NCBI GenBank assembly: GCA_000388065.2
Contig: KB932211.1
Strand: one strand, 5' to 3'
Origin: Fonticula alba ATCC 38817
Taxonomy: Eukaryota; Protista; Nucleariida
DNA length: 45,648 bases
This document shows positions 8,768 through 42,187 of the stretch, piece by piece. A model generated the notes under the pieces. That model had not been told where the DNA came from and searched no databases. It was given only the letters and a program-made list of their open reading frames with translations. Position 1 is the stretch's first letter; each line of letters opens with the position of its first letter. Made by a program: the position numbers and the translations under genes.

Positions 8768-11700
8768 ATGTTCCAGCGGGCGGCCGTCATTCGTCCAGGA
8801 CGCCCACTGGGCCTCCTCCTGGCCTTACTGATGCATAGCCTCCTCTGGTGGGCTGGCCGCTGCAGTGACACCGTGCCCCGCGCCGCGGACTTGGTGTACT
8901 TGCGCGCGCCGGCCCAGCTGGCTCCCCTGTCCGGGCTGGTGTTCGAGCAGCTTCGCCTCCCGGGACTGAGCCATGCCCGGCGCACGGACCCCATCGACCT
9001 GACCAGCGATGTTTTCCTGCAGGATGGTACCAACATGACCGCGCATTCGGAGCATCGCATAGGGGCCGCATTTTCCGGCCGATCGCCAGTGCTCATTGGC
9101 CAGCGCCCGATGCCCACCCCGCACGATTACCAATTGATCTTCCCCCAGACTACCACCGATCGCATGGACGTGGTGGCCTTTTCCCCGGGCCGGGTGCGCA
9201 TCCTGTCGCCCAACCACACGCAGGATTACCAGGACCCCCTGCTGACCGGGGTCCTGGCCAGCTTGCACCTGCCCGGACACCGGCAAACCGCCCTGATGAT
9301 GGCCCGATTCGAGTACTACTGGGCCCATCTCCTTCTCGATGGCAATGCCGGCATCCTCACCGGAGCCGATCGGGATCTCTGGGCCGACGAGCAATTTATC
9401 AGCTCCACCGGGCTCGGGCCGGCCTTTCACGCCTCCTGCGATTGGGAGTACGCCACCGTGCGGGCCCATGACGCCGAGCAAGTCCACTTTTATTCGGACC
9501 TCGGTCGGAAAACCACGCAGGCACTGGCCACGCGCTTGTATTCCACGGCCCCGGACCAGGAGGACGTCATCCACCTGAAGACCGACTCCACGGTGCACGT
9601 GTGTCTGGGCTTCCGCCCGGAGCCGGATCGCGAGACCTATGCCTGCTCCCTGGGCGAGATCCACTTCAGCCTCCATTACATGGCCTCCGAGAAAGTCCGC
9701 TTTATCAATCCCCCCTCACTGGGCATGCCGGCTCCCATGGACCACCTGCTGCTCTGGGACTACAGCTACTTCCAGCTTGTTCGCATCAACTTGGACTTCA
9801 CCCAAATGCAAGCCACCCACTTCCAAGTGATCACCCTTCCCCCCACGACATCCCCCCAGCTGCAAGAAGCTCCCAGTGTATTGGCCTTCCCGGGCCCGGA
9901 TGGATCCATCGCCTGGCGTCTGGTCGTTGGCGATCGGATTTTCTTCCACCCCGCCGACTTCCAATGTCACCAGGACACCTCGATCCTTTGTGCCGAGCGC
10001 CCGAACGAAGTGGACTCCCAAATGGGCTGGCGCTGCGCCCCCGGTCGCTTGTACACGCCGCTCGGCGATAGCCGGCTCCTGTGCGGTGCCTGTGCCGACG
10101 GGCACACCACGGCCTCGCGGCCGCTCGCCGAAGGTCCGTTCCCCTGCCCGCCCCCCCCCCCCCCCTGAAGCCGGCCGGTGAAGCTCCTCCCGCGGAGCTG
10201 GCAGCCGAGGCAGTGCACCGCCCTCCGGCGGCCGCTCCCCCCCCCCACACACACACGCCTCTTGGTCCTTGGCCTGACCTTTCGGCCCGACTGCCTTCCG
10301 ATGCATGTGCCGGGGGAACGGGTGCAAGAAAAAAAATAGCCCCCCCCTCCCCCTCCCACAAACAGCCAATGTTCACATTCTCTGCCCCCTGACCGCCTCC
10401 CTCGCGCCCCCTCCGGCTGCCCGAACCCTACTTCCACGATGCCCACAGGTCACTGCGAGCCCTGCCCCGTCGGCGGCTGCCGGGTGTGCTCCGGCGAGCA
10501 ATGCCTCGTCTGCGAATGGCCACTCATGCAAGTTGTCGATGCGCACACGGGCATTCCCTCCTGCCAGCAAGCTTGCCCCAGCGACACGATAGCTGCCAAT
10601 GGTCTCTGCCTCCCGGCGGTGGAAATCATCCGCCTGGATCTTGACTGGCGTCCGGTGGCCGTGGACCTGGGCCACCTCTCGCCGCCGGCCACCATCTTGG
10701 CCGTGGCCAGCTCTCGCATGGTGCCCACCGACACCGGGCGGCTGATGCTCCAGGCAGCCGCCTCGGCCGTCCAGGCCCAGGCACTGCTGTTTGGCGCGCC
10801 GGGCCAGGTGCTGGCTCTCGTGCCCGGCCCTGCCGATGCATCCCATCACGTCCTCGATGTCCTGGGCTTCCCCTCCTCCGGGCAGGTGGTGGCCATGGTC
10901 GAGGTGGCCCTGCCGCCGGCGAAAAATGCCTGGCCGGCCCTGGGCCTGGTCCTGTGCCATGCAGATGGCCTGGTGCTGGGCCTGGTGGCTCGCTGTCGGT
11001 CGACCTCCCCCCCGGCGGCCGGTGGCCTGTGCCCGGCCTCCTTCGAAACCCTGTACACCGGGCAGCTGGCCGGGTGCAGTGCCATGCAAGCCTCCAGCCG
11101 GGCCGTCAGCCTCCAGCACCACGGCCAGTCGGAGGGTCTGCTGCTGGAGTTCGATCCAACCGGCGAGACCCTGCGCACCGTGGCCTTCGCCAACAGTGCT
11201 GCTCACCCGGCGCACCTGGCCCGCTCGGACCCGGCCATCGGGCGACTGCTGCTTGTCGACGGAGCCGGCCACACTCGCATCCAGCCGGACACTTTGACAT
11301 CGGAGGATGGCCGCCTGGCCGGTTTGTTGGAGGCCCGCGCCGGGCCGGCACTCCCCGGCGACCATATCGGCCTCCAGGCAGTCACACTGCCCGTTCACCC
11401 GGCCGCCGGGTCCTCGGACCAGGTCTTCTTCAGCTACCTACTCCCGGCTCCCGATGGCCACCTTGCCTGGCGCATTGAGCATCTGCCCGAGGGGCTCCTG
11501 CCCCATGGCCGGACTGTCGGCCTGCCCGGCAATACCCGGGACTTGGCCCGCCTTCCGGCCGATTGGTTTGATCTCAACGCCCCGGAGCGGCTGGCCCTGC
11601 GGCTGCTGGTGGTCCGGCTCCCCAGCACCGACTATCCCAGTGCCCTGGTCCTGGTCAGCCAAGGCGGCATGGCCGCGGCCCCGCTCTATTGCCACCCGGC

Positions 11701-12963
11701 CAGTGGTCTTTGCTGGCTCCAGCCGGCCCGCATGCTGGCCATCCCCCCCGGCACCGGGCCCGGGTCCCTGGAGGGGCTGACCGTGGCGCCGGTGCCCGGC
11801 CCCGGGGCCGCCACCGACGGCCTGTCGCTGCTGCTCCTCGACCAAAGCAGTCACCTATGGAGCCTGGACATCGCACTGGTCCCCTGTCCGGACGGGTCCT
11901 TCCCCGCCCTGTCGGCCTGCCAAAAGTGCCACCCTGCCTGCTTCACATGCAAGGGGGCCCAACCAAACATGTGCACCGCGTGCCATGCGGACAGGCTCCT
12001 CTCCACTGCCGGACGATGTGTCGAGTCCTGCCCCCCCGGGGAGTATAACCCAACCGGGGAGCCCGTTTGTCATGCTTGTCACGCCACATGCGTCGAGTGT
12101 TCCGGCCCGGCCGGCAACAACTGCACCGCATGCCCGCAGCCGATGGTGCTCTTCCGCGACACCTGTGTCTCCTTCTGCCCGTCCCCCTCGCAGCTGTGCC
12201 AGCCGGCCGCCGAGTGCATCGAATGCGCGCCGCACTGTGCCGAATGCCTCGTCCGCCCACTCGACGCCGCCCAGACATGCACCGATGAGTGCACCTCCTG
12301 CCAGGAGGGATACCTCCTGGCAAATGCCGGCAAGCTATGTGTGGCGGCCTGCCCCTCCGGAACCTTCCCCGATTGGCCGGCCGATCATGGCCCGGTGCCC
12401 AGCTGCCTGCCCTGTTACGCCGGCTGCCGGGGCGAGTGCACCGGACCGGACCCGGCGCACTGCCTCGCCACAGGCAAGCAGGTGGATGCCGCCGTGGGTG
12501 CGTCCTCTGATGGGCCCTCCCTTGTGGCTTGGGCCTTTTCCTGCCCCGCCCATCGCCCGCCCGAAATGCAACACCCTCCGGCCGCACCTGCGCCGGCAAC
12601 ACCCACCACCGGGCACGCGCGCCTGCCTGCCCGGCCGTGCACCATGGCCCCGCTAGACCCCCCGCCATAGCTCGCACTTACTGACCCCCCGGCCTTGGCC
12701 ATGCTTCGCTGCTCTCCGGCCCCTTGCCCCCTTTCGCCTCCATAGCCGTGGGCCTTGGACTGACCCTGGCATTCTTGGTGCTTGGCATGCTGGCCTGGTT
12801 TGTGTACCGCCACGTGTGGCTGCCACGCAGGCAGGCCGGCATCTTTGGCCCATCGTACGATGCCAAATTAGCCGAGCCCATGTCCGGCGGCGCGGCCGAC
12901 GACATGGCGGCCGCCGCTGACGACCGGAGTGAACCGCTGTTGAAGGAGGAGATCTACCTTTGA
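8768..12963 (+). CDS. Receptor-like type-I membrane protein A (kinase-less), furin-like Cys-rich repeats, ~1210 aa
   Basis: Exons 8768-10133, 10449-12497 and 12746-12963 (both introns phase 1; total 3633 nt = 1211 codons). Signal peptide RPLGLLLALLMHSLLWW, CxxCxxxCxxC repeats, TM AVGLGLTLAFLVLGMLAWFVY and a ~50-aa tail ending EPLLKEEIYL*. Confidence 0.88.
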
Positions 12964-16045: not shown

Positions 16046-16162
16046 GGTCACAGGCTGGGACGGGGCACAGAGCAAAAAAGCTACGGGAGAGACGGAGACA
16101 GGGGAGGATGGCAGGGGCCGGATGGTTTCCCCTCGGTCCGAGCGGCTCCGCGCCTCGGGGGC

Positions 16163-20900: not shown

Positions 20901-21343
20901 AGTGGCCCCCTGGCGCCTTCGACAACATGGGCATGGACAAGCACGAAATTAAAGCCGCCAAAAGGGCCCTGTCCAACCCTGGGGACACTGGCAATCTCGA
21001 GGAGACCATCCGCTGGGCTTTGAGGCAGATGGAGGAGGCGTTCATCGGAGCCCAGACCCCCCCGATGGATCTCCTGACACCTGCCGGCCTGACTGGCTGG
21101 CTGGAATTGACCCACACCGTGGACCCCCCATCGGCCGAGGATGCCATCCAAAGATTCAACACCTTTTCCTTGGGCCAGGCGGTCATCTGCTCCTGGCTCG
21201 ATGCCTTCTCGGCTCTCTCGGGGCGCCGCGACGCGCTGCTGCGTCTCCAGCACAGCCCTCCCAAGAGCGACATCTGCCTTCGCCCGGCCGAGTGCCGGGT
21301 TGCCATCTTCCTCCTCGGCATCCTTGCCAACATGTCTCTCTGA
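17913..21343 (+). CDS. Asteroid (ASTE1)-like XPG/FEN1-superfamily PIN-domain nuclease, ~1000 aa
   Basis: Exons 17913-18146, 18216(or 18252)-18691, 18809-18996 and 19191-21343. It has the family-typical MGV N-terminus and acidic motifs VDLSN, IYPIFVADS, EADD...PILTGDSDAF (assembled across a phase-2 intron) and H3TH-like LPLIHGSD. These match my recollection of the ASTE1 pattern EAD..PVLSxDSDF..LCGND. Confidence 0.8.
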
Positions 21344-26081: not shown

Positions 26082-26581
26082 CGGCCAGCTGGATGCGCAG
26101 GCTCTGCGCACCTCGCGCACACAGATCGCCCGTCGCCGCCCGGGAATCCGGCACACAGGCCACCGGCCACGCCCGAGGGCCAGACCGAGGGGAGGGGACA
26201 CGGGGGCTGCCCGTGTCCCTCGGCGTGGGAGCCGGGCATCTGTCGTGGCCCTGCGCGTCTGCCAACACGAGCCTTCCCCATCCGGCGGCCATGTTGGCAT
26301 TTTTGCGCGGAGACGCAGAGGTCCCCACGCATTGACGGCCAGTAGCCAACGCGCGCTCCCCACAACATGCGCAAAGCACCCCCATCGCCCCGCCTCTCGG
26401 GGCTGAGCGGGCCCGGGGGGCGTTCTCGCGGCATGCCGACCGGCCGCCTGCGCCACACCCGCGCGGCATGCGCCTGGTGTCCATGCGGCGCTCGGCATGC
26501 CGCTGCCTCTTGGCTCCGGAGCAGGACCGACCGAAGCAAGCGCCTCCCCGGGCCCGGTCCATTGTCTAGTTCGGGGACCCA

Positions 26582-26641
26582 TACATGCACATGCACGCAC
26601 ACATGCACACACACATGCACACACACATGCACGCACACATG

Positions 26642-26673
<32 letters not shown>

Positions 26674-26742
26674 TGCACACACACATGCACACACACATGC
26701 ACACACACATGCACACACATGCACACACACACATGTACACAC
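26582..26742 (+). repeat. Compound (CA)n / (CATGCACACACA)n microsatellite
   Basis: Direct inspection. Confidence 0.95.
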
Positions 26743-27518
26743 ATATAGTGCGGCGGCTGACGCCCAGCCGGCGCCCCACCGAAGCCCAGGCACCCCAAAG
26801 TGTGCGCCCGCAGGCAATCCCAGCCCCGACGTCGACCCCGCACCCGCCGCCAAAACGCCCCTGCCACCAGGCACCGAAAGATGCCAGGCACCGGGGCACC
26901 CACTGGCGCGCCAGTGGGTGCCCGGATGCCGCCGAGCAGAATGCTCCATCGGTGCCCGAGGCCCCCATGCTCCCGGGTGGCCCGGGGTCCTCCTGGGGCC
27001 CGGGCAGGCGGTCGCCCCTGGCTGCCGACACACCCCGCCCCGCGCACATGGTCCGGCTTCTGTCCCCCCCGAGTGGATCCCCGGAAATGGCCTCACATCC
27101 GCGGGGCGCTGCCCCTGGCCCGGCATGTGACGGCACCCCTCCGCCCCGGCAGCACGCGCGCTCGACCCCGCCCATGTCCTCCCCCGCTCTTTCCCGCGCC
27201 CCCCATAACCGGCACATGACGATGGCCGCCCGCCGGACGCCGGGTGTACCACCGCCGGGCCCACAGCCTCGGCCGGTGGCCCGGGCACGGCCGAAGACCA
27301 GCCGCGCCCCCGACAGGCCCCGGGCCCCCCGAGGCGGGGACATTCACCGGGCGGCCCGCGCGAGCACACCCGGCCCGCGCAGCGGCAGCCAGCAGCTCAC
27401 ACACACCACGCGGCAACCGGCGAGGACACCCCACAAAACCCGGCAGGGGCCGAGGCAAATGAAAAATACCATGCACATCGTTGTGTCTATTTTGGCCAAG
27501 GATCGCCACGCCCCCCTC

Positions 27519-30500
27519 TCAGGGCAGACCGCCCACGGCGACATACTGCCCGGCGCAGCGCTGGCGGAAGGTGGCTGCCGGCGGCCGCCGGCCGGGGTCC
27601 TCCTGCCAGGCGGCCTGCACCAGGTCCCGGGCCTCCTGGCCCAGGGACTCGACGCTCGGCCGGGCACCGCCACACACGGCACGCACGATGTCCTGCATGC
27701 CCATGCCAGCCCAGGGGACAGCCCGCGCCAGGCACTCGCCCAGCATGACCCCCGCCGCATACATGTCCACCGGGAAGAAGAGCCCCGGGTCCAGGGGGAC
27801 CGCCCGCTGGAAGACGTCCACCAGCTCCGGCGCCGCATACCGCACCGACATGGCATTCAGCTCGGGCATGCTGTTCACCAGGGCCGACAGCCGGCTGGCG
27901 CTCAGGTTCCTGGACGTGCCCAGGTCCCCGAGGGCCGCCCGCCAGGAGGAGCCCGCCTGGCTGACAAACACATTGCCCGGCTTCAGGTCGCAGTGGGCCA
28001 CCCCGTGCGCGTGCATGGCCTCCAGCCCGGCGGACCACTGCTGGCAGATGTCCCACAGCTGGGCCGCCGACAGCTCCACCTCCGAGTGCAGCAGCGTGGC
28101 CAGGTCGCTGTCGAAGCGCTCCATCACAATGGCCGGCGGCTGGTCGCTGTACCCGAACAGCCGGACGATGTGGCCGTGCTCGCGCAGCAGCCACATCAGC
28201 GCCACCTCGTTCTGGAAGAGGGCATGGTGCACCGGCTGCATGGCCTCGGCCTTCATCTTCTTCACGGCCACCACCTCCGGGCAGCCCAGCCGGGCCACGA
28301 TCCCGGCCCCGACCGCCTGCGCGGCGTACACCCACGCCTGCGTCCCGGCCCCCAGCGGCTCGTCCAGCGGCCGGAAGTCCACCGCCACGTCCACCAGGAT
28401 GGCCCCGGGCAGGGCCAGCTCCACGATGGTGTTCAGCATGGTGGCGTCCTCGTCGTCGGCCGGCGCCTTGCCGACGGCCTGCCCGCGGCGCCGGCGCACC
28501 AGGAACAGCACCAGCAGCACCAGCAGGATCAGCAGCAGCAGCAGGCCCACGCCCAGGCCCACGGCCAGGCCCACGCGCGAGGACTTGGGCCTGGAGGAGG
28601 AAACACAGTCACCCTCCTCGGGGCCGGTGCAGGAATCGGTGCAGCTCGCATGGCAAGGGGCGCACGCGGCCGGCTGGCCATCCGCATCGGCGAAGTAGCC
28701 AAGAGGGCAACCTTCCACACAGGCCGCCCCATCGAGCAGGAACCGGCCGGCGGCACACCGGTCGCAGGTGCCGATGTCCGGGCAGTCAAGGGCCCCGGAG
28801 GCGGTGGGCTTGCAGCCGGGCTGGCCCGGGCCCGGGGTGCACGCGTCGCACCCGGCCGGGCAGCCGAGGCACACGCCGCCCACCGGGGCCGACGCCCCGA
28901 CGCAAGCCGTTCCACAGGCACCCTCATCCGGCCGCAGGAGGCCACCAGTGCACCCGGTGCAGAAGGTCCCCGACCCGTGGCAAGTCCGGCACGACCCGTC
29001 GCAGGGCTGGCAGGCGCTGCCGCCCGGCTCGGCGAAGGTCCCCTCCGGGCAGGCGGCATGGCACCCGCCGAAGTCCAGGAAGTGGCCCGGCTGGCAGGCG
29101 CTGCAGGTCGCCGCGCAGGCCGCCCCGAGGACGTGGCATTCCGTGCAGGCGGCCGGGCAGCCGACGCACCGGCCGGAGGCCGCGCAGCCCGCCCACCCCG
29201 CCGGGCAGCCAGCACCACACAGCCCACCCGGCAGGACCAACCCACCCCCCCGGCAACCGGTGCAGGCACCCCCATGCTCGCATGTGGCGCACGATGCGGC
29301 GCACGGCATGCACACGCCGTCCACCAAGAAGAAGCCCCCCGGGCAGCCGAGCAGGCACTCGCCGCCCAGCAGCACCCGGCCCGCCGGGCAGCCGGTGCAC
29401 TCATCCAGCCCGGCCCCGCGGCAGGCGGCGCACGTCGAGTGGCAGGGAAGGCATGCGCCCTGGCTCTCGAACAGCCCGCCCGGGCAGCTGGCATGGCAGC
29501 CATTGCCCAGCAGCAGCGGCGCTGCGGGGCCGCAGCTCAGGCAATGGTCAGCCCCCGGGCCAGAGCAGGTCCCACACGACCCATGGCACAGGGAGCACAG
29601 GTTGCCCAGGGGCGTGGTGGTGCTCGGGCAGGAGGCCACGCACTGCGGGCCGGCCAGCAGCCACCCGCGCTGGCACAGCTCGCACGTGTCCGGCGCCCCC
29701 GCGCAGCTGGCGCAATGCTCGGCACAGGGCGAGCACCCGGCCGGCGAGGCGTGGTACCCCACCGGGCAGGCCGGCACGCAGCGCACCGGCGACCCGCCGG
29801 CCGGCAGGGCCAGCAGGCCCGCCCCGCAGTCCGGCAGGCACTCAGTCGAACGGGTCCCGGCGCACTGGTCGCAGGACACATGGCACGGCAGGCACCGCCC
29901 GGCCAGGGCCACATGCCCCGGGGCGCAGTGCTGCACGCAGTCCTCGTCCTGCAGCACGCCGCTGGCACAGCGCCAGCAGTGCTTGTCGCTCGGGCCGTTG
30001 CACGTGGCGCAGGCCAGGTCGCAGGGCTGGCAGGCCCCGCCGACGGCATCCCTGTACTGGCCCTCGGCGCAGCCGGACACACAGGCGCCCACGCCGGGGC
30101 CGGCCTCCACCAGGTCCAGCCCGGCGGCACAGCCCGTGCACTGGTCGGCCTGGCCGCCGGCGCAGGTGGCACAGCTGACGTCGCACGGCTGGCACGACTC
30201 GCCATTGGGCCAGGCCCCCGGCGGGCAGTCGGCCACGCAGGCCCCATCGCGCGCCAGGAGCAGCCCCGGCTCGCAGGCCAGGCACCTGTCCATCGTGCAG
30301 GAGAGACAGCCCAGATCACAGGGAACGCAGGCGCCCACGCCGGCGGACGCCTGCCCGGCGGCCCAGCCAAAGCCATCGGCACACACCTGGCACCGGCCGG
30401 GCTCGCCGGTGCACAGCTCGCAGCTGGCATCGCACTCGGCGCACCGGACATCACCGGCATACTGCCCCGGCAGGCAGGCACTCCCACACAGGGACCCCGG

Positions 30501-33500
30501 CTGCTGGTCGACCCCGAGGAAGATCAGCCCCGGCCGGCATGCCGAGCAGCTGCCGGCATCTTGACACCCGTCGCACGACCCGTCGCACGCCCGGCACGAC
30601 CCATCGCCCCCGGGGAAGTACCCCCGGGCACAGGCCACACAGGCATCCGCCGAAGTGCAGGACACGCAACCGTCCGGGCACGGGGCACAAGTCCAAGTGC
30701 TGGAATCCGGCCACATGCCCTCCGGACACGAGCTCACACATGCCCCAGCATGAAGCCAGCTGCCCGGGACACAGGCCGTACAGGCGGCCGGGTCGCCGGA
30801 CCGCACGCACTCGCTGCAGGGGTCCGCACATGGCAGGCACCGGTCCGGCTGGTCGCCGGCCAGGCCCTTGCCATGGCCACCGACACACTGATCGCACACG
30901 TACTGGCCGCCCGGGCCGGGCTCGGCCCGGCACACGAGGCACGTGTCGTGGCACTCGCACCGGCCATCGGGCCCGGGGAAGGTGCCGCCGGGGCAGCTGG
31001 CCACACAATCAGCCGGCAGCCCGGGCAGCCAGTGCCGACAGGCAAGGCAATCACTCGCCATGGGCCCGGTGCACCCGGCACATGCCGCATGACACGGCTC
31101 GCACTGGGCCCCATACGTGCCGGCCGGGCAGGCCATGTCCATCGACAGGGTCACCAGCCCCACCGTCGGCGCATACCCCAGCAGGGTCAGCCGGCTGCCC
31201 GACACCGGCCCCGGCTCGAGGGCCCCCTGGACGACAAATTGCCACAGCGGCACATTCCCTTCCAGGTGCATGCTGGCCGGCAGGGGCATGATGTGCCCCG
31301 GCAGGAAGGCACACTGCCCGGCGTCCAGCTGGGGACAATGCAACAGGGCAACCCCGATGAAAGTGCGCGCCAGCAGCAGCAGCGCACTCGGATGAGCCAG
31401 CCCCCCGCCCGGCAGCCGAAGCTCCTGATAGTAGACATTCGCGTGGACCCCGTTCGGCAGGTACTGGTACGTCGGGAAGGACCCGATGGTTTGCCAGGAG
31501 AAGGGCAAATGGATGGACCGGCCGGCTGGCAGCATGTCCCCCGGCAGGGAAAGGATGTCCCAGTTGGCCCCGAAGGTGTGCGGCAGCACCAGCCACCGGG
31601 GCAGCCCAGGCCCCCGGTAGAGGGTCATCGGCCGGAAGAGCCGGGTGGGCAGGGCCGGCGAGCGCGACACCGCCATCTCCAGCATCGGACCCTGGCGGTT
31701 GGTATCCTGGCTCAGCAGCTGCTCCGGCATGAGATTCAGCCGCCAAGATGTCCCCTGCCACAGGACCCAATCCCCGAGGGTCGGGTCGGCGCGCATGCCG
31801 AGGCCCGACACCGCCGGCATCCTTACCATCCCCAGGCCGGTGATGTGGGTCCCTTGCAGGCGCCGGGTTTGCGGATTCACGCGGTAGTAGAAGTTCGAGC
31901 CGGACAGTGCCACCAGGTGGTTGGCGTCCTCCCGGAGGACCCCATAGCAAATGCCCAGAGCCAGGTCCACCGGGCTGGCCGGCTCGGCGGCCACGCACGG
32001 CCCCCCCGACCCGGTGCATGTCAGCCAGGTGAGGTAAAATTTTTGCTCCGGTCCACAAAAGAACACCGCATACTCCCACCGGCCATTGACCAGGAAGGGC
32101 CCGGCCTCGGCAAAGGTGGTCACCGTATCGAGGGACCAGTCTCCCAGCAGGCGCACTTCCACCGGCACCACCGGCGCCCGGCCGATGTCCCCGGCCGGCA
32201 GGATGTACGCCCGGTTTTGCTGGGTGAAGAGGAGCATCCCCGGGGCCGGGGCATCGCTGCTGGCCGGCAGCACCGGCAGCCCGGTGCCCGGGTCCACCGA
32301 CAGCCATGACTGCGCGGCCGCCGTGATCCAGTCGCCCGGCTCCAGCCAAGGCGCCGGGAGTTTGGCCAAATCCGAAAGCCCCACCTCCAGCCGGACGGCC
32401 CCGGCCGCCTGGCAGACGCCCACCACCGGCAGGAAGCCCTCCGAGCAGGCGCCCCGGCAGACCGTGCTGCCCCCGGGGCCGGTGGGCTCCGGCAGGAAGC
32501 CATGCTCGCACACGAGGCATGTGTCCGGGGTGCATGTTCGGCAGTTGGTCTGCGAGCAGGGCCGACACACGTGGGTGTCCTTCGAGAAGGGGGCCTCATC
32601 TGTGGTGTCCGAGGGGGGGCAAGGGGGCATGGGGGTCATGGGGGGCATGGGGGGCATGGGGGATGGCCATATCAACCACGAGCGCCGATGGTCGGCGGCG
32701 GTGGCGCGGGCCACACCGCGAGGCGGAGGAGAAGGGGGACGTCGAAAAGACGGAGGGGAGGAAAGACACCGGGAAGGCCGAGGGGAAGGAGGAACACATG
32801 GACCACACCGGGAAGGCCGAGGGGAAGGAGGAATACATGGACCACACCGGGAAGGCCGAGAAAAAGGAACACATGGACCACGCCGAGAAGGCCAAGGGAA
32901 GCATGGCGCCACCAGGACAAGCAAGCACACGGAAGGGCAGGTCAGAAAATGGCCAAAGAAGACACAGGACACAAAGAGCAGGAAGAAGAACGGCACGCAC
33001 CCGCCGGCCGGTCGAGGTACCAGCCATCCGCACAGCCGGCACACATGTGGTTGGCCGAAATGTACGGCGAGTCGGTGTACCCCGGAGCACAGCCCCACCC
33101 ACGCGCCAGGCCGGAGGACACCGTCGCGCTGTCACACACCAGCGTCCGGTCACTGTCACACAGGAAGGCCTCCGAATCGAAGAGCACCTTCACCCCGGCC
33201 ACAAGGGTCCACCGGTGGGCCCCGGTCACGGTGACCGCCAGCCGCGCCAGGCGCAGTACATCACGCGAGAGGGCCACCTCCGACGGGAGGACCACCCGAC
33301 GCAAGCCCAGCCCCATGCCCAGGGGATGGACCTGCCACAGGCGGTCGCGCGGATCGCCCGCCCGCGGGGACACCACATAGAAGGGCCCCGGCGCGTCGTC
33401 CATCGCGAAGGCGGCCGACGCCAAGAGGTAGGCCCCGTCCATGGGCACCGCGGCCGGCAGGGACACCGTCACCGGGACCAGCTGCTCGGCCGGGGTCCCC

Positions 33501-34351
33501 TCGAAGCAGGCAAACACCGCCACATGGCCGGTCGCCAGCAGCACCGCCACGTCCGAGCCATCCGGGCAGCCGCTGGCCGAGGAGAGGATCCGCGTGCTGG
33601 CCACATGCACCGGCTCCCCATCGAGAGGCTGCCGGCGGGAGGAGACCCCCCCATCGCCGGCCACCGCCAGCCGGACAAGGCCCTCGCTGGCGGTCGCCAG
33701 GAAGAAGGCCCGCCCCGGGCCCGCGGCCGCCGTGGCCAGCCCGACCACCGGGTCCACCCCATGCTGCATGATTTGCAGCCCGGTCGAAGTGACCATGCCC
33801 AGGATGATGGTGCCTTCTTGACCCGGGCTGTCATCCGCCCAAAGCAGCAGCGCCTCCAGCGGGCCCGTGGCACTGGCCGCCAGCAGCCTCACCGCCGATC
33901 CCGGCAGGGGGAACACATTTGCCGCGGTGAAGAGCCCCACCTGCGTGGGGGTATGCTCCAACACCAGCGGCGTCGGGGCATTCGGCCGGGCCAGCAGGAT
34001 GAGGTGCTGCACGCCGGCCGGGTTGGACCGCGACGAGGTGGAAGCCTGGCGGGTGTCCGAAAAGAGCGGCCCCCAGCGGTACTCGCCGGAATGCCGCATC
34101 GGCGCCATCTGCTCGTAGTGCCAGAGGGTGGTGGCCGAGCTCCAGTGCGAAGACACCGTGGCGCTGCTCCCCAACGTGGGCAGCCCCATGAAGTAGGTCG
34201 TCCGTGTGAAGGGGTAGCTGGCCAAATGCAGGAACATGTCCTGCCCGTGGGACGGCGCCACAAGGGCCAGCACCGTCAGCAGCAGCGCATAGCACAGCCA
34301 CGCCGGGCCCATCGGGCCCGGGGGGGGACCGACTGCCGGCCGCTGCGCCAT
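27519..34351 (-). CDS. Receptor-like TKL-group protein kinase B with furin-like Cys-rich ectodomain, ~2143 aa
   Basis: Exons 34351-33001 and 32599-27519 (phase-1 intron; 6432 nt = 2144 codons). Signal peptide ...ALLLTVLALVAPSHG; ~18 furin-like repeats; TM GLAVGLGVGLLLLLILLVLLVLFLV-RRRR. Kinase motifs GAGTQA, VAVKK, NEV, HCDLKPGN, DLG, YAAPE, DMYAAG, PW and RRP. Confidence 0.93.
32766..32906. repeat. 39-bp minisatellite inside intron 1 of receptor kinase B
   Basis: acaccgggaaggccgaggggaaggaggaacacatggacc x2, then a 36-bp unit and a partial unit; a 9-bp gggggcatg array is nearby at ~32624-32662. Confidence 0.9.
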
Positions 34352-34958: not shown

Positions 34959-35578
34959 TGTAGTGGTATCCCCCAATCTCTATAAACCAAGTCACAGGTT
35001 GAATTACAAGATCCCCACGTGAACGGCCCCGTGGAAAATTATGGCATGCTTGAATCGCATTCCTCCTCAGGAGGAATGCGGGGTAGATCGACAGCCAGAT
35101 GGCCGCCGAGTACCGGGCCAGTTCGGTGGCCCAGGAAAGGAGGGAGACACGCGTGCGCGCGGGGTTCTCAGATCCACCCCACGACCAACCCAAGGTCAAA
35201 AGGGGNNNNNNNNNNNNNNNNNNNNNNNNNNNNNNNNNNNNNNNNNNNNNNNNNNNNNNNNNNNNNNNNNNNNNNNNNNNNNNNNNNNNNNNNNNNNNNN
35301 NNNNNNNNNNNNNNNNNNNNNNNNNNNNNNNNNNNNNNNNNNNNNNNNNNNNNNNNNNNNNNNNNNNNNNNNNNNNNNNNNNNNNNNNNNNNNNNNNNNN
35401 NNNNNNNNNNNNNNNNNNNNNNNNNNNNNNNNNNNNNNNNNNNNNNNNNNCCCTTCTGGTTCGGTACGCCCTCCTTCATGCCCGAGCGGTCCCTAACCAG
35501 TAGTAAGATTTCCGGTATAGCTTCCGTCAAAGCTTCACTCCTTTGACGTAAGACTGGATCCGTGAGAACCCTGCTACA
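34959..35578. mobile_element. LTR-retrotransposon-like insertion (solo LTR, or a collapsed full element spanning the N gap 35206-35450)
   Basis: Starts TGTAG at 34959 and ends CTACA at 35578 (inverted termini, TG...CA). Identical 5-bp flanks GCGCC at 34954-34958 and 35579-35583. GC content drops abruptly; TATAAA at 34981-34986. Confidence 0.78.
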
Positions 35579-35816: not shown

Positions 35817-35822
35817 AAAAAA
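35817..35822 (-). terminator. Pol III terminator (T6) of tRNA-Ala
   Basis: T run starting 8 nt after the tRNA 3' end. Confidence 0.8.
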
Positions 35823-35829
35823 GAAACCA

Positions 35830-35902
35830 TGGAGGCGGAGGGTATCGATCCCCCTGCCTGCCGCATGCAAAGCGGCCGCTCTACCGTTTGAGCTACACCC
35901 CC
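35830..35902 (-). tRNA. tRNA-Ala(UGC), intronless, 73 nt
   Basis: GGGGGTG-TA-GCTC-AAACGGTA-GAGC-G-GCCGC-TTTGCAT-GCGGC-AGGCA-GGGGG-ATCGATA-CCCTC-CGCCTCC-A. Full cloverleaf, G3:U70 Ala identity pair, eukaryotic Ala-type A54 T-loop. Confidence 0.97.
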
Positions 35903-37767
35903 GGCTTGGTGCGAGGACCTCGCGCATCTACGGCCTATGTACTTGTGCTTTCGAGGCCACGCGCCCCGCGCCCTCCTCGCGTCTCCGGCCCCGGCGCCAC
36001 CCCATCCAGCTCTCCTGGGGCGTGCCAGCGCGCCGGGTCGCCGGCCAATCGGACATCCCCGGCGCCCCGGATCCACGCCGGATCCGACGACGCAGCGGTC
36101 TCCCCTCCGGCCGGCCTGGCCCGAGTGGCGAATGCCGCCGCGAAGCCCACACAAGGCCGGCACCGCCACACGGCCACCCGCCCTGGCGCCATGTGCTCTA
36201 CTGCGCCCCAGGCAAGGTCCATGCTGTCGCGTCTCTGCGGGCACATGTGCATGCTGGCCCGCCGCGGGCCGGCCCGAGCGCCAGCCTACACGCAGGAGGG
36301 GGCCGGTGGATGCGCGCGCGCACCGCCGCCAGGCGCGATCCGGCCCCCGTCCCGCATGGACGCCACACAGCACCGGTGAGCCCCTCCCCCCCGGCAGCCG
36401 CGCCCAGGCCGAGCGCCGCAGCCACATGCGGCCGCCTCTTCGCAAGCCCAAGGGCTGGGAGGAAGCGCCGGGCAGGCACACACAACAACCCCCCAGCCGG
36501 ATGGCCAGCCTGCGCGAGGACCGCCACACGCCGTGCAAAGCCCCGGCCGGGTGGCTCCCACCCCTGCACGGGGACGGCGCCAGCGCGCGGCCTCTCGAGC
36601 AGCGGCCCAGTCGGCGGACCAAGTCAAGGGAGGCCATGCCGCCGGACATGGCGAGCGCCGCCAGCGCATCCCCCCGCTGGGCCGGCCGGTGGGCGTATCG
36701 TGGCCACCGAACGCGCGCACATCGCAGGCCCGCCGATGCCGGTGCCGGCGGCCGCCAGCAGCCCCGCGGTGCCGGTCCGCCGGGCACGAATCCCCCTCGG
36801 CGCCCCGCGGTCATGGGGGCCCCCATCGCATGTCCGGTGCACTTGGGCCGGCGGAGCAGCCAGGGCAGGGGTGCTCTCGCGGGCGCGGGCGCCCCGGCCG
36901 CCGCCGCCGCCGCCGCATGGGGCTCAGCCCGCCGGGCGGCCCCGCACCCCCGGGCTCTCGGGGCCTCTCGCCGCATTGCCCGGCCGTCGGGGCGGCCCTC
37001 CCCCTGCCCCCCTCCGGTAGTAATACGGCACCCCGTCGGCCCCGGTGGGCACGCTCGCGCTTGGGCACATTGCTCGAGAGCGGCAAAGGAGAGGGGGGGG
37101 GGGGGGGGGGAGAGCGAGGGAAGGAGAGAGATAGAGAGATAGACAGGAGCAACAGAGCACGAATGCGCCGGCCGGTCGCCCCCTGTGACGGCAGCCAGCG
37201 GAGCCGATCTGTCCGTTGGCTTTTCGGAAGGGGGGGGCCGCGGAGGGCGGGCCCCGGACGCGCACAGCCGCCAAGCAGGAACGCCCCATCGAGCGTGCAC
37301 ATCATACCCACACACGCCCCCATCCAGTCAGTCTCAGGCCCGGGCGCATGCCCCGGCGGGCAGGCCCGCGCCCCCCCCCCCCCGCCCACCAGGGCCATGC
37401 CCTCGAGCAAATGGCCCGTAACTCGCCGGCGTCTGGTGGAGCGCGCCCGAAGGCCCCGCGCGGCGCTGGCGTCGCCGAGACCCCAGACCGCAAAATACAC
37501 GGTTCTGGTGGTCCATTCCGGCGTTCTGCAAACCTCGCACCTCGGGTCCTCGGCCCTGGGGGCTCTCGTCGTGTACGCCCGGCCGGGGGGCCCTCACAAT
37601 GGCCGGTCCCCGCCCGGTGGCGACACTGTGCCCGAGGGCTCTCCCTCTGCTGGAAGACGGGACCGGCGCCGGGAGCACCAGGAGGAGGCCCCCAAGTGAG
37701 ACACCAAGTGAGGCCCCCCCCCCCCTCTCACACACACACACACACACACACACGCACAGAAGATCCA

Positions 37768-37773
37768 TTTATT
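37768..37773 (-). promoter_or_regulatory. Polyadenylation signal AATAAA of receptor C
   Basis: ~78 nt past TAA, followed by a (TG)n GU-rich tract (37729-37752). Confidence 0.65.
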
Positions 37774-37850
37774 GCGAGGCTCGAGTTCATTGTTCGAGGA
37801 GGGCGCGAAGAAAAGCAACGGCCTCCGCCGCTTCGGGAGCGCCGAGAGCA

Positions 37851-40800
37851 TTAGGAGATGACATCCATCTCCACCGGACCGCCCTTCTGCGGGGTCTGCT
37901 TCCGGGCGATAATCCACATGCCCAACAGCACGAGCAGAATAATCAGCACAGGAAGTCCCAGTCCCAGGCCAAGCCCGAGGGCAAGCTTCTTGTTGCGGCC
38001 GGAGGTGTCCTTGCTGCCGCTGGCGTGGCTGCTGTTGCTGCCACTGGTAGGGCTGCTGCCACTGCCGCTGGTAGGGCTGCTGCCNNNNNNNNNNNNNNNN
38101 NNNNNNNNNNNNNNNNNNNNNNNNNNNNNNNNNNNNNNNNNNNNNNNNNNNNNNNNNNNNNNNNNNNNNNNNNNNNNNNNNNNNNNNNNNNNNNNNNNNN
38201 NNNNNNNNNNNNNNNNNNNNNNNNNNNNNNNNCCGCCGCTGCTGCCGCTGCTCCCACCGCCGCCGCCGCCGCTGCTGCTGCTGCCGCTGCTACCGCCGCT
38301 GCTGCCGGATCCCGGAGCAGCCACGCACTCATCGGCCCCGGGGCCGGTGCAGGACGCGTCGCAGTCCGCGTGGCAGCGCCGACACAGGCCGGCAGCCTGA
38401 TCGGCAAAGTACTTCGCCGGGCAGGCGGCCACGCAGGAAGTCCCCTCGAGCAGGAGATGCGAACTGGCGCACCGGTCACAGGTGGGCACCGTCGGGCAGT
38501 TCCAGGCCCCGTCCGGGCGGCGAACACACCCGGACTCGGTGCCCGGGGCGGTGCAGGCCGCGCAATTGTCCACGCACTGCAGGCACACGCGGTCGATGCC
38601 GAACTGCGGCCGGCCCGCCGGGCAGGAGGCCACACAGTCGCCGCTCTCCGGCAGGATGAAGGCATAATTCGCGCAGCTGGAGCAGAAGTCCACATGGCCG
38701 GCACAGGCGTCGCACTTGGGATTGCAGCTGTCCAAGCACAGGCCCTCCTCCGACAGCAGGACCTTGGGCTTGCACTTGATGCAGGTCGTGTCGCAAGGCC
38801 CGGCCGCCGTGGCGCCGGCCAGCCCGGCCGGCGACAGGCTCGACGAGAAGACACACTGCACGCAGCCGTTCGAGCAGGGGGCGCACCGGCCCTCCGCTTC
38901 GCACTTCAGCGTCGACCCATTGCAGGTTTCCCTGCATGCGCCGGTCGTATTGAGGAAGAGCCCCGGGTGGCAGGAGGTGCATTCGACCGAGGAGCTCCCC
39001 TTGCAGGTGGGACAGTCCCGGTGGCAGGTCGCGCACGCGTACCCGGGCGTGTCGGAGAACCACCCGGCCGGGCAGGTGGCCAGGCACACGTTCGGCTGGT
39101 CCGGCATCCATGTCTTGCATTTGGTGCAGTTCCCGGGCCCGGCCGCGTCGCACGTGGCGCACGTCGGGTCGCACGCTTCGCATTCGAACCCCCGGGGGTA
39201 GCTGCCGGCGAGGCAGTTATCGCCCACCGCCATGATCATCAGGCCGCCGGCCTCTTCGAAGGCCAGCACCCGGGCCAGCTCCCTCGGCCCGGCCGGGTCC
39301 AGGAGCTCCACCGAATCCCACGACCGCAGGCTCGGGTTCGTGGCCATGCCCCGTGAGAGTGAGGACCCGAGCTTCAGCTTGCAGGGGCCGTCATCCTGCG
39401 GGCAGTGCAGCACCGCGAGCGCCACCATCTCGGCGGACATCATCAGCAGGATGCTCGGGTACTCCAAGCCGCCCTCGGGGAAGGGCAGCGCCTGCGCGCG
39501 CATGGTCAAATCATTGACCATGCCAATGGGGTTGGGCATCGGGTAAAGGAGGCGTTGCTCCTGCACGGGCAGGAGGGTGGTCCGGCCGCCGGACACCATG
39601 TCCCTCGGCATGCGGAAGGCCGTCCATGCCCTGTCCTCCACGAGGCTGACGACCAGCTCCGGCTGGCGTCCGCCCCCGCGCGGCATCAGCGTCACCTGGG
39701 CATTGACCGCCGGATCCCGCTGGGCCAGCTTCCCGGCCAGGGTGGCCACACGCGAGTCCTGCAGATCGAGCCCGGTCGGCCAGAGGGAAAGTTCGCCGGT
39801 GTTCCTCTGGATGACGGCCCACTCGCCGGCCGCCGGGGTCGACCGCGCCGGGTGCCCCGGCGTCTCGGCCAGCGAAACCAGGATTTCCACGTCCGGGTAC
39901 GTCTGCACATGGAAGGCCTGGTTGGCCGGGTCCGGGGTGAAGATGACGGTCGAGCTGCCGGGGCCGCGTGCGGACACCCGGCCGTCCGGCAAATGGGTGA
40001 ACCCCTGCCGGATGGCCATCTGCATGTTGGTCGGGCTCAGGGGGCCGGCCACGTCGCAGGGCCCGGGCGCCGGGCACGCCAGCCACCCGTGGAAAAGGGC
40101 CCCGGTGTTCAGCCGCATGAGCAGCCCCATGCGCAGGGTGCTGCCCACGGTGAAGGGCCCCACCTCGGCCATGTGCACCACATGCTCATCGGGGCCGAAG
40201 GCGCTGCCATGCAGCAGGGCCACATGGTCCGGCTCCGTGGTGGTGATGGTGTGCACCTGGTTCGCCTCCACCAGGAAGGGAATGTTGTTGTTCCGCAGGA
40301 GGAGCACATTGTCCGGCGGGGGGGTCGACCCGTCGGCCGCCGGGATGGTGGCCAGGTGGGTGGCCGGGTTGACGCCCAGTCGCGACCGGTAGAACCCCAC
40401 AATGCCCGGCACCCCGGGGCCCGGCTTGTAACCGAGGGTCTTGAATTCCTTGAAGGCCACCCCCGACCGGGGGGCGTTGGTGGGCAGGCACACGCTGGCG
40501 CTCAAGCTGTAGCCTTCCGAGCATTGGGCCACGCAGGCCATCGGCCCGCTGATGTCGTGGTACTCCGGCACATGGCCGGCCTTGCACACGAGGCAATGGT
40601 CGGCGTTGCAGGTGGCGCAATTTTCCTGCGGGCATGGCTTGCAGGCGTGCGTCGTCGACTCGAAGGGCGCCAGTCCTGCGGGGTTTTCATTTTTCATTTT
40701 CCCGGTCGCCCCCACAACATGGCCAGAGGGACGCGCGAGGGCGGGGCAAGAGGAAAGGCCAATCGGTGTTAGTCCAAGCGTGCCGGCCAAGGCCCCGGCC

Positions 40801-42187
40801 CAGCCCCGGTGTCCCGGGCAAACGCACCGTCCGGACGATCGAGGTACATGCCGTTGTCGCAGCCGGCGCACAGGTGGCTCTCCGACACGAGGGGCGACAG
40901 GACATGGCCGTCGGCGCATTGCCAGCTGCCGGAGGCGTCGAGGCTGGCCCGGCTGGCGTCCGCACAGCGGATGGTCCTGTCGGTGGTGCACCCGAAGGAC
41001 GCCTGGTCGAGGAGCACATGGTGCTGGTGCGTCAGCATCCACCGGGCGTCGGCGCCCGACGGGCCCATGCGCAGCAGGGCCAGCTCCACCTTGGACACGT
41101 CCACCTGGTCCAGGCGGTGCTTCTCCCACGTGAGGCTGCCATTCAGGTGGATCAATTTCCACGCCACGCTGGGCGTGCCGGGGGCCCCCTGCACCAGGTA
41201 GAAGAGGCTCTGGGTGGGCTCCTGCAGACTGGCCGCCTGGGGCGCCAGGAGGATGCCATTGGTGGGCTCCCCTTCCGGCAGGCGGAAGACCACCGTCGGG
41301 GTGTTGGCCCCGGCCGGGTCGTAGCAGGAGAAGACCTCCACATCGCCATTGGCCAGCAGGAGCACCATGTCCAGGGAGCCCGGGCAGTCGGCCTTCCGGC
41401 TGAGCAGTCGCGTGGTGATCATGTACAGGATGGCCTCCGGCCGGGACTGGGTCGTGTAGGTCACCGGGTCGGTGTCCAGGGGCCCGGCATGCACCACATG
41501 GTAGAGGGCCCGCTCGCTGGACAGGTAGAAGCCCCGGCCGGTGCCGGGGGAAATGCTCACCGGCTCCCGGAGCATCGGCAGGGTGGTATCCAGAATCGTC
41601 GGGTAGGTGGGATTCATGAGGGCCAAGTAGGGCTCCGAGTAGCCGGGCGCCGAGGTGTCCGGCGTCGCGCCCATGAGGTACACCTGGTCCATGGTCTGGG
41701 CCTGGACCGCTTGGATGCGGGCCGAATCCGGGAAGGACAGTCGATAGGTCCCCTGGAAGAGGGTGGCCGATGTGGTGAAGAACATGACCACGGCCGGGTC
41801 GCTGGACCCGGGCACCTCGGCGATGACGATCCTCACCAGGTCACCGGGCGTGTATCCGACACGTTGTTTCGGTGTGCTGGACTTGTGGAAGAAGCTGCCC
41901 AGGCGATAGTCCTCGAAGTCGGTCATCGAGTCGTCCTGGGTCCGGTAGTGGTAGCTGTTCTCGTTGGGGAAGACGGCCACCTGGGAGAGCTGGCCCGCCG
42001 GCGTGTAGATTCCGACCAAGCCGGTGCTGGTCGACAGGGGAAAGGGAGCCTGGTGCATGAAGTGCCCGGATGTGTTGGATCCATGCGAGGACTTGGCAAG
42101 CAGGGCGAGCAGCGCCACCACGACCAGCATCGGGCGGAGGAGGGCTGCCGGGTGCGCCCGGGCTGGCCACAGCCGAGGGGTGGCCAT
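37851..42187 (-). CDS. Receptor-like type-I membrane protein C (kinase-less), furin-like Cys-rich repeats and Ser/Gly stalk, ~1390 aa
   Basis: Exons 42187-40828 and 40675-37851 (phase-1 intron). Signal peptide MLVVVALLALLAKSSHG; ~6 furin-like repeats; GS-rich stalk with gap 38085-38232; TM LALGLGLGLGLPVLIILLVLLGMWII; 18-aa tail ARKQTPQKGGPVEMDVIS*. Confidence 0.9.

What the first reader, a model, noticed from the sequence alone, without database searches (positions are those of the whole stretch)
8768..42187. Three paralogous receptors, one with a kinase and two without: a possible receptor-kinase / receptor-like-protein system
Seen in sequence: A, B and C share the order signal peptide - domain I (~400 aa) - Cys module - phase-1 intron - Cys modules - domain II - furin-like stalk - GxGxG TM. 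The exon-1 ends align (A GWRCAPG..LCGACADG; B GWGCAPG..MCAGCADGWYLDRP; C SWQCADG..LCAGCDNGMYLDRP), as do the exon-2 starts (B APFSKDTHVCRPC; C APFESTTHACKPC; A HCEPC). Only B has a cytoplasmic kinase; A and C stop 18-50 aa after the TM, and C has its own poly(A) signal, so it is not a truncation artefact. Established: plants pair receptor-like kinases with kinase-less receptor-like proteins, and small-xxx-small TM motifs promote helix dimerisation. Inference: A and C are co-receptors, decoys or adhesion/recognition molecules that signal through B-type kinases. In a social amoeba this could serve self/non-self or prey recognition.
Basis: partly seen in the sequence, partly recalled or inferred. 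Interest (0 to 1): 0.75.

Follow-up and report, generated by a model that had tools for sequence, protein, structure and literature searches.

The report
Kinase-less paralogs of Fonticula receptor kinases

Summary
A (8768-12963, +), B (34351-27519, -) and C (42187-37851, -) are real spliced genes with one shared layout. That layout is a signal peptide, beta-propeller I, a small Cys module split by a phase-1 intron at the same position, beta-propeller II, a CXXC/furin-like stalk and a Gly-Leu-rich TM. Only B has a kinase: TKL-like, catalytic motifs intact, HCD (non-RD). A stops 51 aa and C 17 aa after the TM. No kinase remnant lies downstream of either, and a tRNA-Ala gene separates C from B.

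The organism is Fonticula alba. A is H696_05425 and C is H696_05432, both "hypothetical" in NCBI.

The trio is not a closed system. Propeller I matches at least 83 places in this genome, and 55 of them have a B-like kinase 4-8 kb downstream. A profile search of 1.84 billion proteins found the head only in Fonticula. A, B and C are distant paralogs (about 20-30% identity in the heads). Kinase-less members are scattered over the family tree, which points to repeated kinase loss.

Co-receptor function is inference only. This scan has already met the same family on other pieces of this genome ("double-propeller receptor kinase array"). New here are the membrane-anchored kinase-less members. No paper found describes the family.

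The parts
8768..10133 (+). Gene A (H696_05425) exon 1: signal peptide, beta-propeller I (divergent), first half of the Cys module. Ends in phase 1.
   Evidence: hhalign to the family profile 99.5%, E 3e-23, and 96%, E 3.6e-9 for the propeller alone. Identical to XP_009497534.1 residues 1-455.
10134..10448 (+). Gene A intron 1, GT..AG, phase 1, at the position shared by B and C.
   Evidence: An annotated splice variant (XP_009497535.1) uses another acceptor inside this intron.
10449..12497 (+). Gene A exon 2: Cys modules, beta-propeller II (about 10613-11875), short CXXC stalk (47 Cys).
   Evidence: BLASTP to C exon 2 4e-27 and to B exon 2 4e-24 over the full length. Shuffle z 8.7-10.7 on the propeller part alone.
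12498..12745 (+). Gene A intron 2, GTGCGT..AG, phase 1, just before the TM exon.
   Evidence: The junction is confirmed by the NCBI model.
12746..12963 (+). Gene A exon 3: TM (12748-12807), 51-aa cytoplasmic tail, stop at 12961-12963. No kinase.
   Evidence: This exon is unique in the genome. No kinase remnant lies downstream.
33001..34351 (-). Gene B exon 1: signal peptide, beta-propeller I, first half of the Cys module.
   Evidence: AlphaFold model pLDDT 89.3, pTM 0.86. Generic 7-blade-type propeller matches at Z 15-17.5.
32600..33000 (-). Gene B intron, GTGCGT..AG, phase 1.
27519..32599 (-). Gene B exon 2: Cys modules, beta-propeller II (31128-32426), long CXXC/furin-like stalk (161 Cys in the exon), TM (about 28574-28497), juxtamembrane segment, protein kinase (about 28364-27570), stop at 27519-27521.
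   Evidence: Pfam Pkinase 1.5e-29; VSP 37.1 bits against a cut-off of 31.4. Propeller II model pLDDT 82.6, pTM 0.85, Z 15-18. Kinase motifs read. Best PDB matches are B-Raf/Raf at 1.6e-15.
40828..42187 (-). Gene C (H696_05432) exon 1: signal peptide, beta-propeller I, first half of the Cys module.
   Evidence: 29% identity to B exon 1 over 435 aa, E 2e-40. Identical to XP_009497541.1 residues 1-453.
40676..40827 (-). Gene C intron, GTGCGT..AG, phase 1.
37851..40675 (-). Gene C exon 2: Cys modules, beta-propeller II (39234-40496), CXXC stalk (61 Cys), Ser/Gly-rich linker holding the assembly gap 38085-38232, TM (37985-37905), 17-aa tail, stop at 37851-37853.
   Evidence: BLASTP to B exon 2 4e-62.. 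TM and tail 45% identical to those of paralog P0007.
37768..37773 (-). AATAAA poly(A) signal of C, 78 nt after the stop, followed by a (GT)n run.
35830..35902 (-). tRNA-Ala(TGC) gene between the 3' end of C and the 5' end of B. It marks them as separate transcription units.
35206..35450 (.). Assembly gap in the intergenic stretch upstream of B. It lies outside all coding models.

Best explanation
Shown: A, B and C are three distant members of a very large receptor family found so far only in Fonticula alba. All are type I membrane proteins. Each has two unrelated 7-blade-type beta-propeller heads, each followed by small Cys modules. These sit on a rod of CXXC/furin-like repeats, followed by a Gly-Leu-rich TM helix. 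B continues into a TKL-like Ser/Thr kinase with intact catalytic motifs and an HCD (non-RD) catalytic loop. A and C end 51 and 17 residues after the membrane, so they cannot phosphorylate anything themselves.

Inferred:
- The fast-diverging heads bind ligands.
- B signals by ligand-driven clustering and trans-phosphorylation.
- The kinase-less forms arose several times by loss of the kinase from receptor-kinase ancestors.
- A and C are maintained as surface binders with specificities of their own.
- They pass a signal either by joining kinase-bearing family members in the membrane (RLP-like; my estimate about 0.35) or through adaptors on their short tails as adhesion or uptake receptors (about 0.3).
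- Decoy function (about 0.1) or decay (about 0.1) is less likely.
For: Architecture and homology.

Folds: propeller I pLDDT 89.3, Z up to 17.5; propeller II pLDDT 82.6, Z up to 17.9.

Kinase: Pfam 1.5e-29. Motifs read: VAVK, HCDLKPGN, DLG and APE. Raf is the best PDB match.

Family size: 83 domain-I places, 58 domain-II places and about 99 B-like kinase loci. 55 of the 83 domain-I places have a kinase 4-8 kb downstream.

Restriction to Fonticula: 65 hits among 1.84e9 representative proteins. All ten whose source I looked up, including the three weakest hits, are Fonticula except one weak bacterial FG-GAP protein. The 55 other hits were not traced to a source.

Heads diverge while the signalling end is kept: locus C13 is 37% identical to B in head I but 83% in the kinase. 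B exon 2 is 64% identical to P0005 over stalk and kinase, against 37% in head I.

Kinase-less state is real:
- No kinase remnant in the window apart from B.
- A tRNA gene lies between C and B.
- The NCBI models end at the same stops.
- A has an annotated splice variant, which suggests transcript evidence.
- Coding periodicity is present and there are no frameshifts, despite only about 20-30% identity to other family members.

Other TM-plus-short-tail gene models exist: P0007, P0062, P0038 and P0033.

Repeated origin: the S state needs 5 changes for 5 rows, and at least 3 are forced by starred branches.

C plus P0007, both kinase-less, as one clade gives a tree 15.5 lnL better than the free search (p-AU 0.75). 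The two tails also share a C-terminal motif. This suggests an old, maintained kinase-less lineage.
Against: No expression, localisation or interaction data could be examined.

In a genome of about 70% GC, long open frames arise by chance (see the 1980-aa antisense ORF over B), so an open frame alone is weak evidence.

Deep branches of the tree are poorly supported (34 of 56 drawn open), and the root is unknown, so loss versus gain rests on parsimony.

The join across the gap in C is not proven.

Stalk lengths of A, B and C differ several-fold, which argues against a tight ectodomain complex of A or C with B.

C's TM and tail also weakly resemble the TM and juxtamembrane stretch of other receptor genes, so the shared tail motif is modest evidence.
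Confidence: 0.6

Rival explanations
1. One reading: A and C are dedicated co-receptors that pair specifically with the neighbouring kinase B through small-xxx-small TM contacts.
For: The three genes are adjacent in the window. A Gly-Leu-rich motif at the outer end of the TM is seen in the family members whose TM I read. The plant RLP-SOBIR1 precedent is from my own knowledge.
Against: A, B and C are not each other's closest relatives. There is no recurrent kinase-less/kinase-bearing pair geometry; kinase-less places simply sit inside tandem arrays. A tRNA gene separates C from B. Stalk lengths differ greatly. A's TM has only G-x-G.
Confidence: 0.12
2. A and C are autonomous adhesion, phagocytic or recognition receptors. 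They use their short tails to recruit cytoskeletal or endocytic adaptors and do not depend on family kinases.
For: The heads are as divergent as those of any kinase-bearing member, which implies ligands of their own. C and P0007 share a conserved C-terminal tail motif. A's tail exon is unique and acidic.
Against: No recognisable sorting or adaptor motif was established. The tails are very short, and no functional data exist.
Confidence: 0.3
3. A and C are decoys or ligand sinks that damp signalling of kinase-bearing relatives.
For: Truncated decoy receptors are common in animal receptor families (my own knowledge). Kinase loss has recurred in this family.
Against: A decoy must keep the ligand specificity of a signalling relative. 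The closest heads I found are only 32% (C) and 25-27% (A) identical.
Confidence: 0.1
4. A and C are decaying remnants (unprocessed pseudogenes in the making) of receptor kinases that lost the kinase end.
For: The family is in birth-and-death turnover. Some gene models have juxtamembrane-only or internally deleted kinases: P0009, P0019, P0002. A has a lower GC3 (0.80-0.82) than B and C.
Against: Frames are intact over 1210 codons in A and about 1390 in C. All splice sites are intact, the alignment to paralogs stays in register, and the cysteines of the Cys modules and stalk align with those of B and C, all at only about 20-30% identity. C has a poly(A) signal, and A has a splice variant.
Confidence: 0.1
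5. Assembly artefact: the kinase ends of A or C are hidden in gaps or lost through a misjoin.
For: Two gaps lie in the stated range, and one is inside C.
Against: The stops of both A and C lie in read sequence. A has no gap for 22 kb downstream. C's stop, AATAAA and a tRNA gene all precede the next gap. tblastn finds no kinase fragment.
Confidence: 0.03

Closest known systems
Plant receptor-like kinases and receptor-like proteins (for example LRR-RLK / LRR-RLP with SOBIR1 or BAK1)
   Same: Single-pass type I receptors in large, clustered, lineage-expanded families. The kinases are of the TKL type, and many members are non-RD. Kinase-less membrane-anchored paralogs with short tails occur among the kinase-bearing ones. 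The TM helices are Gly-rich.
   Different: There is no sequence or fold relation in the ectodomain (two beta-propellers plus a CXXC rod, not LRR, LysM or lectin). Membership of the kinase in the IRAK/Pelle clade was not shown; the best solved relatives are Raf. No adaptor kinase has been identified. This is an independent origin in Holomycota.
Entamoeba histolytica transmembrane kinases (TMKs) and the related kinase-less Gal/GalNAc lectin subunit Igl; Giardia VSP-type CXXC repeats
   Same: A large protist family that combines a CXXC-rich ectodomain, one TM and a TKL-like kinase, with kinase-less relatives on the cell surface. B passes Pfam's VSP cut-off (37.1 against 31.4 bits).
   Different: Entamoeba TMKs have no propeller heads. 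No orthology was detected: the head profile hits only Fonticula.
Animal Sema-PSI receptors (Met/Ron kinases, plexins) and EGFR/insulin-receptor furin-like domains (with kinase-impaired ErbB3)
   Same: A beta-propeller head followed by a small Cys-rich module on a single-pass receptor, with furin-like Cys-rich rods. These families mix catalytic and non-catalytic members.
   Different: Sema domains are not among the 50 best fold matches of either head. The Pfam Furin-like and GF_recep_IV hits are below threshold. The kinase is not a tyrosine kinase, and Fonticula has no TKs (PMC4342544).
The same family as met elsewhere in this scan ('Fonticula double-propeller receptor kinase array')
   Same: The same two-propeller heads, stalk, TM and kinase. 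The family size estimates agree (80-100), as does the restriction to Fonticula.
   Different: This window adds membrane-anchored, short-tailed kinase-less members.

Membership tests
Fonticula double-propeller receptor family (unnamed, defined here by profile A2) | N-terminal propeller I matches the family profile. | tested here: met
   B is the seed. C is 29% identical to B, E 2e-40. A: hhalign 99.5%, E 3e-23, and 96%, E 3.6e-9 for the propeller alone.
Fonticula double-propeller receptor family (unnamed, defined here by profile A2) | Phase-1 intron inside the Cys module after propeller I. | tested here: met
   Same position and phase in A, B and C. The ends of the 28 paralog matches read carry the same motif; their introns were not read.
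Fonticula double-propeller receptor family (unnamed, defined here by profile A2) | Second propeller, CXXC stalk and Gly-Leu-rich TM. | tested here: met
   for propeller II. for the TM.
Fonticula double-propeller receptor family (unnamed, defined here by profile A2) | Cytoplasmic B-like kinase. | tested here: not met
   Met for B only. A and C end 51 and 17 aa after the TM, with no remnant downstream. They are kinase-less members of the family, not receptor kinases.
Eukaryotic protein kinase superfamily (B only) | Catalytic core: beta-3 Lys, alpha-C Glu, HxD...N catalytic loop, DxG, APE. | tested here: met
   Pfam Pkinase 103.6 bits against a cut-off of 31.7. VAVK, HCDLKPGN, DLG and APE are read. 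The catalytic loop is HCD, that is non-RD. Relatives mix HRD and HCD. Activity itself was not tested.
Tyrosine kinases (metazoan-type RTK) | HRDLAARN/HRDLRAAN-type catalytic loop and placement in the TK group. | tested here: not met
   The loop is HCDLKPGN (Ser/Thr type). The Pkinase score exceeds the PK_Tyr_Ser-Thr score. PMC4342544 reports no TK in Fonticula.
Plant RLK/RLP (IRAK/Pelle-type kinase with LRR, LysM or lectin ectodomains) | Kinase in the IRAK/Pelle clade and the characteristic ectodomain families. | tested here: not met
   No LRR, LysM or lectin Pfam hit. The ectodomain is two propellers. The best solved kinase relatives are Raf. A kinase-group phylogeny was not done.
Sema-PSI receptors (plexin, Met) | Sema-type 7-blade propeller followed by a PSI domain. 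| tested here: not met
   No Pfam Sema or PSI hit. No Sema chain is among the top 50 fold matches of either head. A weak fold match cannot be excluded.
Integrin-alpha / FG-GAP (VCBS) propellers | FG-GAP repeat signature in the blades. | tested here: inconclusive
   One bacterial FG-GAP protein was hit at E 1.3e-4. hhalign gives only 21% over one blade. No Pfam hit.

The most novel reading that the evidence does not exclude
Fonticula alba, a sister lineage of fungi, has independently evolved a plant-like two-tier surface recognition system. In it, dozens of double-propeller receptor kinases work together with membrane-anchored kinase-less paralogs such as A and C. These paralogs contribute their own ligand specificity and signal by TM-mediated pairing with family kinases, for prey or kin recognition during feeding and aggregation.
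Probability: 0.15. Interest if true: 0.8.

Novelty: new variant of a known kind. Interest (0 to 1): 0.58.

Why it matters
Fungi largely lack receptor kinases, and Fonticula has no tyrosine kinases (PMC4342544). Even so, this amoeboid sister lineage of fungi carries more than 80 receptor Ser/Thr kinases with an ectodomain design seen nowhere else. Like plants and animals, it has repeatedly made kinase-less membrane-anchored versions.

That is a further independent instance of the pattern "receptor kinase family plus non-catalytic paralogs". It occurs in an organism that both hunts bacteria and aggregates. It therefore offers a tractable test of whether such pairs are a general outcome of expanding recognition receptor families.

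The genes are annotated only as hypothetical proteins, and I found no paper that describes them.

Tried and rejected
- Pfam on the heads found no family at E up to 0.1.
- Head I and head II as an internal duplication: no sequence signal (hhalign 0.5%; shuffle z 0.2).
- Pairwise A-I against B-I or C-I: no signal (z about 0). Only the profile shows the relation.
- Sema-PSI or integrin-type identity of the heads is not supported.
- Kinase remnants after A or C: none.
- The word-based protein search was nearly blind here, giving 2 hits and 1 hit, because Cys-rich words filled the candidate list.
I did not try another route, so the genome-wide count of TM-plus-short-tail members rests on gene models only.
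- Literature: no paper in the library describes the family.
- Nine other long ORFs of the window had no Pfam hit.

Full report
**What is there.** The window is about 70% G+C and comes from Fonticula alba (G000 contig C11:40236-85883). Every database protein identical or nearly identical to the window's products carries an H696_ locus tag of that species.

- Gene A (+) has three exons: 8768-10133, 10449-12497 and 12746-12963.
- Gene B (-) has two: 34351-33001 and 32599-27519.
- Gene C (-) has two: 42187-40828 and 40675-37851.

All four introns are GT..AG and phase 1, and three of them start GTGCGT. My model of A is residue-for-residue the NCBI protein XP_009497534.1 (H696_05425, 1210 aa). C is XP_009497541.1 (H696_05432), except that the NCBI model splices over the assembly gap. 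All exons show strong coding periodicity (GC3 0.80-0.91). There are no in-frame stops, against 1-22 stops in the two other sense frames of the five long exon parts.

**The gaps, tested first.** The gap at 35206-35450 lies in the intergenic stretch between C's 3' end and B's ATG. It is 855 nt upstream of that ATG and on B's side of a tRNA-Ala(TGC) gene at 35830-35902. It affects no coding model.

The gap at 38085-38232 lies inside C, in a Ser/Gly-rich linker between the last Cys module and the TM helix. The reading frame carries through only at the nominal gap length (2 + 148 nt = 50 codons), so continuity is not proven.

Homology gives only modest support for the join. The closest paralog of the ectodomain before the gap among the family's gene models (P0007, H696_06274) also matches the TM and tail after it: 45% over 44 residues, E 7.7e-5, with a similar C-terminal motif. 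That match is only the fifth best in the genome, and several other loci match the TM and tail better.

**Is the similarity more than cysteine richness?** Yes. I cut out the propeller parts without their Cys modules and compared them with 200 shuffles.

| Pair | z |
|---|---|
| B-I / C-I | 32 |
| B-II / C-II | 37 |
| A-II / B-II | 8.7 |
| A-II / C-II | 10.7 |
| A-I / B-I or C-I | about 0 |

A's first head shows no pairwise signal. It does match a 30-sequence family profile in register: hhalign 96%, E 3.6e-9 for the propeller alone, and 99.5%, E 3e-23 with the Cys module.

**Folds.** Neither head has a Pfam match.
- With family alignments, AlphaFold gives confident all-beta models: head I pLDDT 89.3, pTM 0.86; head II pLDDT 82.6, pTM 0.85.
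- Both match many 7-blade-type beta-propellers at Z 15-18 (rmsd 4-5 A over about 290-320 residues). No one family stands out.
- The two heads are not detectably related to each other in sequence.
- The stalk is a CXXC/furin-like rod. B passes Pfam's VSP cut-off, while the Furin-like and GF_recep_IV hits are below threshold.
- Stalk length differs greatly. The Cys counts of exon 2 are 161 in B, 61 in C and 47 in A.

**Kinase.** Only B has one (Pkinase 1.5e-29). It has the beta-3 lysine (VAVK), the catalytic loop HCDLKPGN, DLG and APE. It therefore looks active and is non-RD. Relatives carry either HRD or HCD. Its best solved relatives are B-Raf/Raf (1.6e-15), so it is TKL-like and of the Ser/Thr type. 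This agrees with the published absence of tyrosine kinases in Fonticula (PMC4342544).

A ends 51 residues and C 17 residues after the TM. tblastn with B's kinase finds nothing else in the window. C has AATAAA 78 nt after its stop, and a tRNA gene lies between C and B. NCBI also lists a splice variant of A (XP_009497535.1). It uses an acceptor inside intron 1, which suggests that transcripts were seen (the link to transcripts is my inference).

**Family context changes the picture.**
- In this genome, B's head I matches 83 places, head II 58 places, and the kinase 135 pieces (about 99 loci).
- 55 of the 83 head-I places have a B-like kinase 4-8 kb downstream on the same strand. 28 do not. Some of those 28 are at contig ends.
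- Most members lie in tandem arrays (C5, C9, C10, C11, C17).
- Within the family, C ranks 30th and A 73rd among B's head-I matches. The trio is therefore a chance sample of distant paralogs, not a co-duplicated unit.
- A profile of head I, searched against 1.84 billion representative proteins, returned 65 hits. The ten I traced, including the three weakest, are all Fonticula alba apart from one weak bacterial FG-GAP protein. The other 55 were not traced to a source.
- Heads diverge far more than signalling ends. The C13 paralog is 37% identical to B in head I but 83% in the kinase. P0005 is 37% identical in head I but 64% over stalk and kinase.

**Kinase-less members.** Among the gene models, several besides A and C have a TM followed by a short tail: P0007, P0062, P0038 and P0033. 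Others keep only the juxtamembrane stretch (P0009, P0019, the first half of P0003) or a gutted kinase (P0002). Some of these could be model errors.

On a head-I tree the short-tailed state needs 5 changes for 5 rows, of which well-supported branches force at least 3. Holding C and P0007 together gives a tree 15.5 log-likelihood units better than the quick free search (p-AU 0.75). With their shared tail motif, this suggests an old kinase-less lineage rather than a fresh truncation. A groups with P0030 and P0033 (SH-aLRT 92). The root is unknown, so "loss" rests on the kinase-bearing majority and on the homology of all the kinases.

**How it most likely works.**

Shown: the architecture, the folds, the kinase motifs, the absence of a kinase in A and C, the family size and its restriction to Fonticula.

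Inferred:
- The heads bind ligands, and B signals by clustering.
- A and C are maintained surface binders with specificities of their own.
- They need either a kinase-bearing partner in the membrane (RLP-like, about 0.35) or tail-bound adaptors (about 0.3).
- A decoy role is unlikely because no kinase-bearing member has similar heads (at best 25-32% identity).
- Decay is unlikely given intact frames, intact splice sites and the cysteines of the Cys modules and stalk still aligning with those of B and C, all at such divergence.
- A specific A/C-B partnership is not favoured, for three reasons: there is no pair geometry, a tRNA gene separates C from B, and stalk lengths are very unequal.

**Comparison with what is known.** In function, the closest parallels are plant RLK/RLP families and the Entamoeba TMK/Igl family. 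In structure, there are echoes of the Sema-PSI and furin-like receptors of animals. None of these is a family to which A, B or C belongs (see the membership table).

This scan has already met the same family on other pieces of this genome (notes s1-065497, -065624, -065467, -065516, -065580, -065393). My results were obtained independently before I read those notes. They agree on size, folds and restriction to Fonticula. I adopt their name "double-propeller". Their claim that gene conversion keeps the stalk and kinase alike was not tested here.

I found no paper that describes the family.

**Method note.** No joined protein was used in any search or fold.

Noticed in passing
window 35830-35902 (-): A tRNA-Ala(TGC) gene sits in the 3.5-kb spacer between the 3' end of C and the start of B.
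   Followed up: partly
window about 10134-10448 (intron 1 of A): NCBI lists a splice variant of A (XP_009497535.1, 869 aa). It uses an alternative acceptor inside intron 1, which shifts the frame. The product lacks the signal peptide and propeller I, so it is probably a non-productive isoform.
   Followed up: partly
window 26367-32309 (+), antisense to B: A 1980-aa open frame runs antisense to B's exon 2. Many other ORFs of more than 400 aa overlap real genes on both strands. In this genome of about 70% GC, ORF length alone is no evidence of a gene.
   Followed up: partly
G000:C13:437877-444452 and other loci: Paralogs are only 37-40% identical to B in head I but 67-83% identical in the kinase. 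The signalling end is far more conserved (or homogenised) than the heads.
   Followed up: partly
P0002 = H696_03229 (G000:C5:about 102461-108986): This family member's gene model joins the juxtamembrane stretch directly to the last 40 residues or so of the kinase. The genome search finds kinase pieces 1-55 and 166-292 only. It is either a gutted kinase or a model or assembly fault.
   Followed up: no
G000:C5:320000-400000 (kinase pieces at C5:347893-348423 and 396614-397141): C's TM and tail weakly match the TM and juxtamembrane stretch of several genes in another cluster. The kinases there are only 34-36% identical to B's, so this may be a second, more distant receptor kinase family.
   Followed up: no
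window 37729-37752 and around 26600-26750: Long (GT)n/(CA)n microsatellites. One lies directly after C's poly(A) signal and another just downstream of B's 3' end.
   Followed up: no
window 19085-21343 (+) and eight other long ORFs: Nine other long ORFs, lying between A and B and near both ends of the window, have no Pfam match. By locus-tag numbering, NCBI has six genes between A (H696_05425) and C (H696_05432).
   Followed up: partly
A exon 2 (10449-12497): The exon that encodes propeller II plus the stalk in A is flanked by two phase-1 introns (a symmetric 1-1 exon), and the TM plus tail is a separate exon. In B and C there is no intron before the TM.
   Followed up: no
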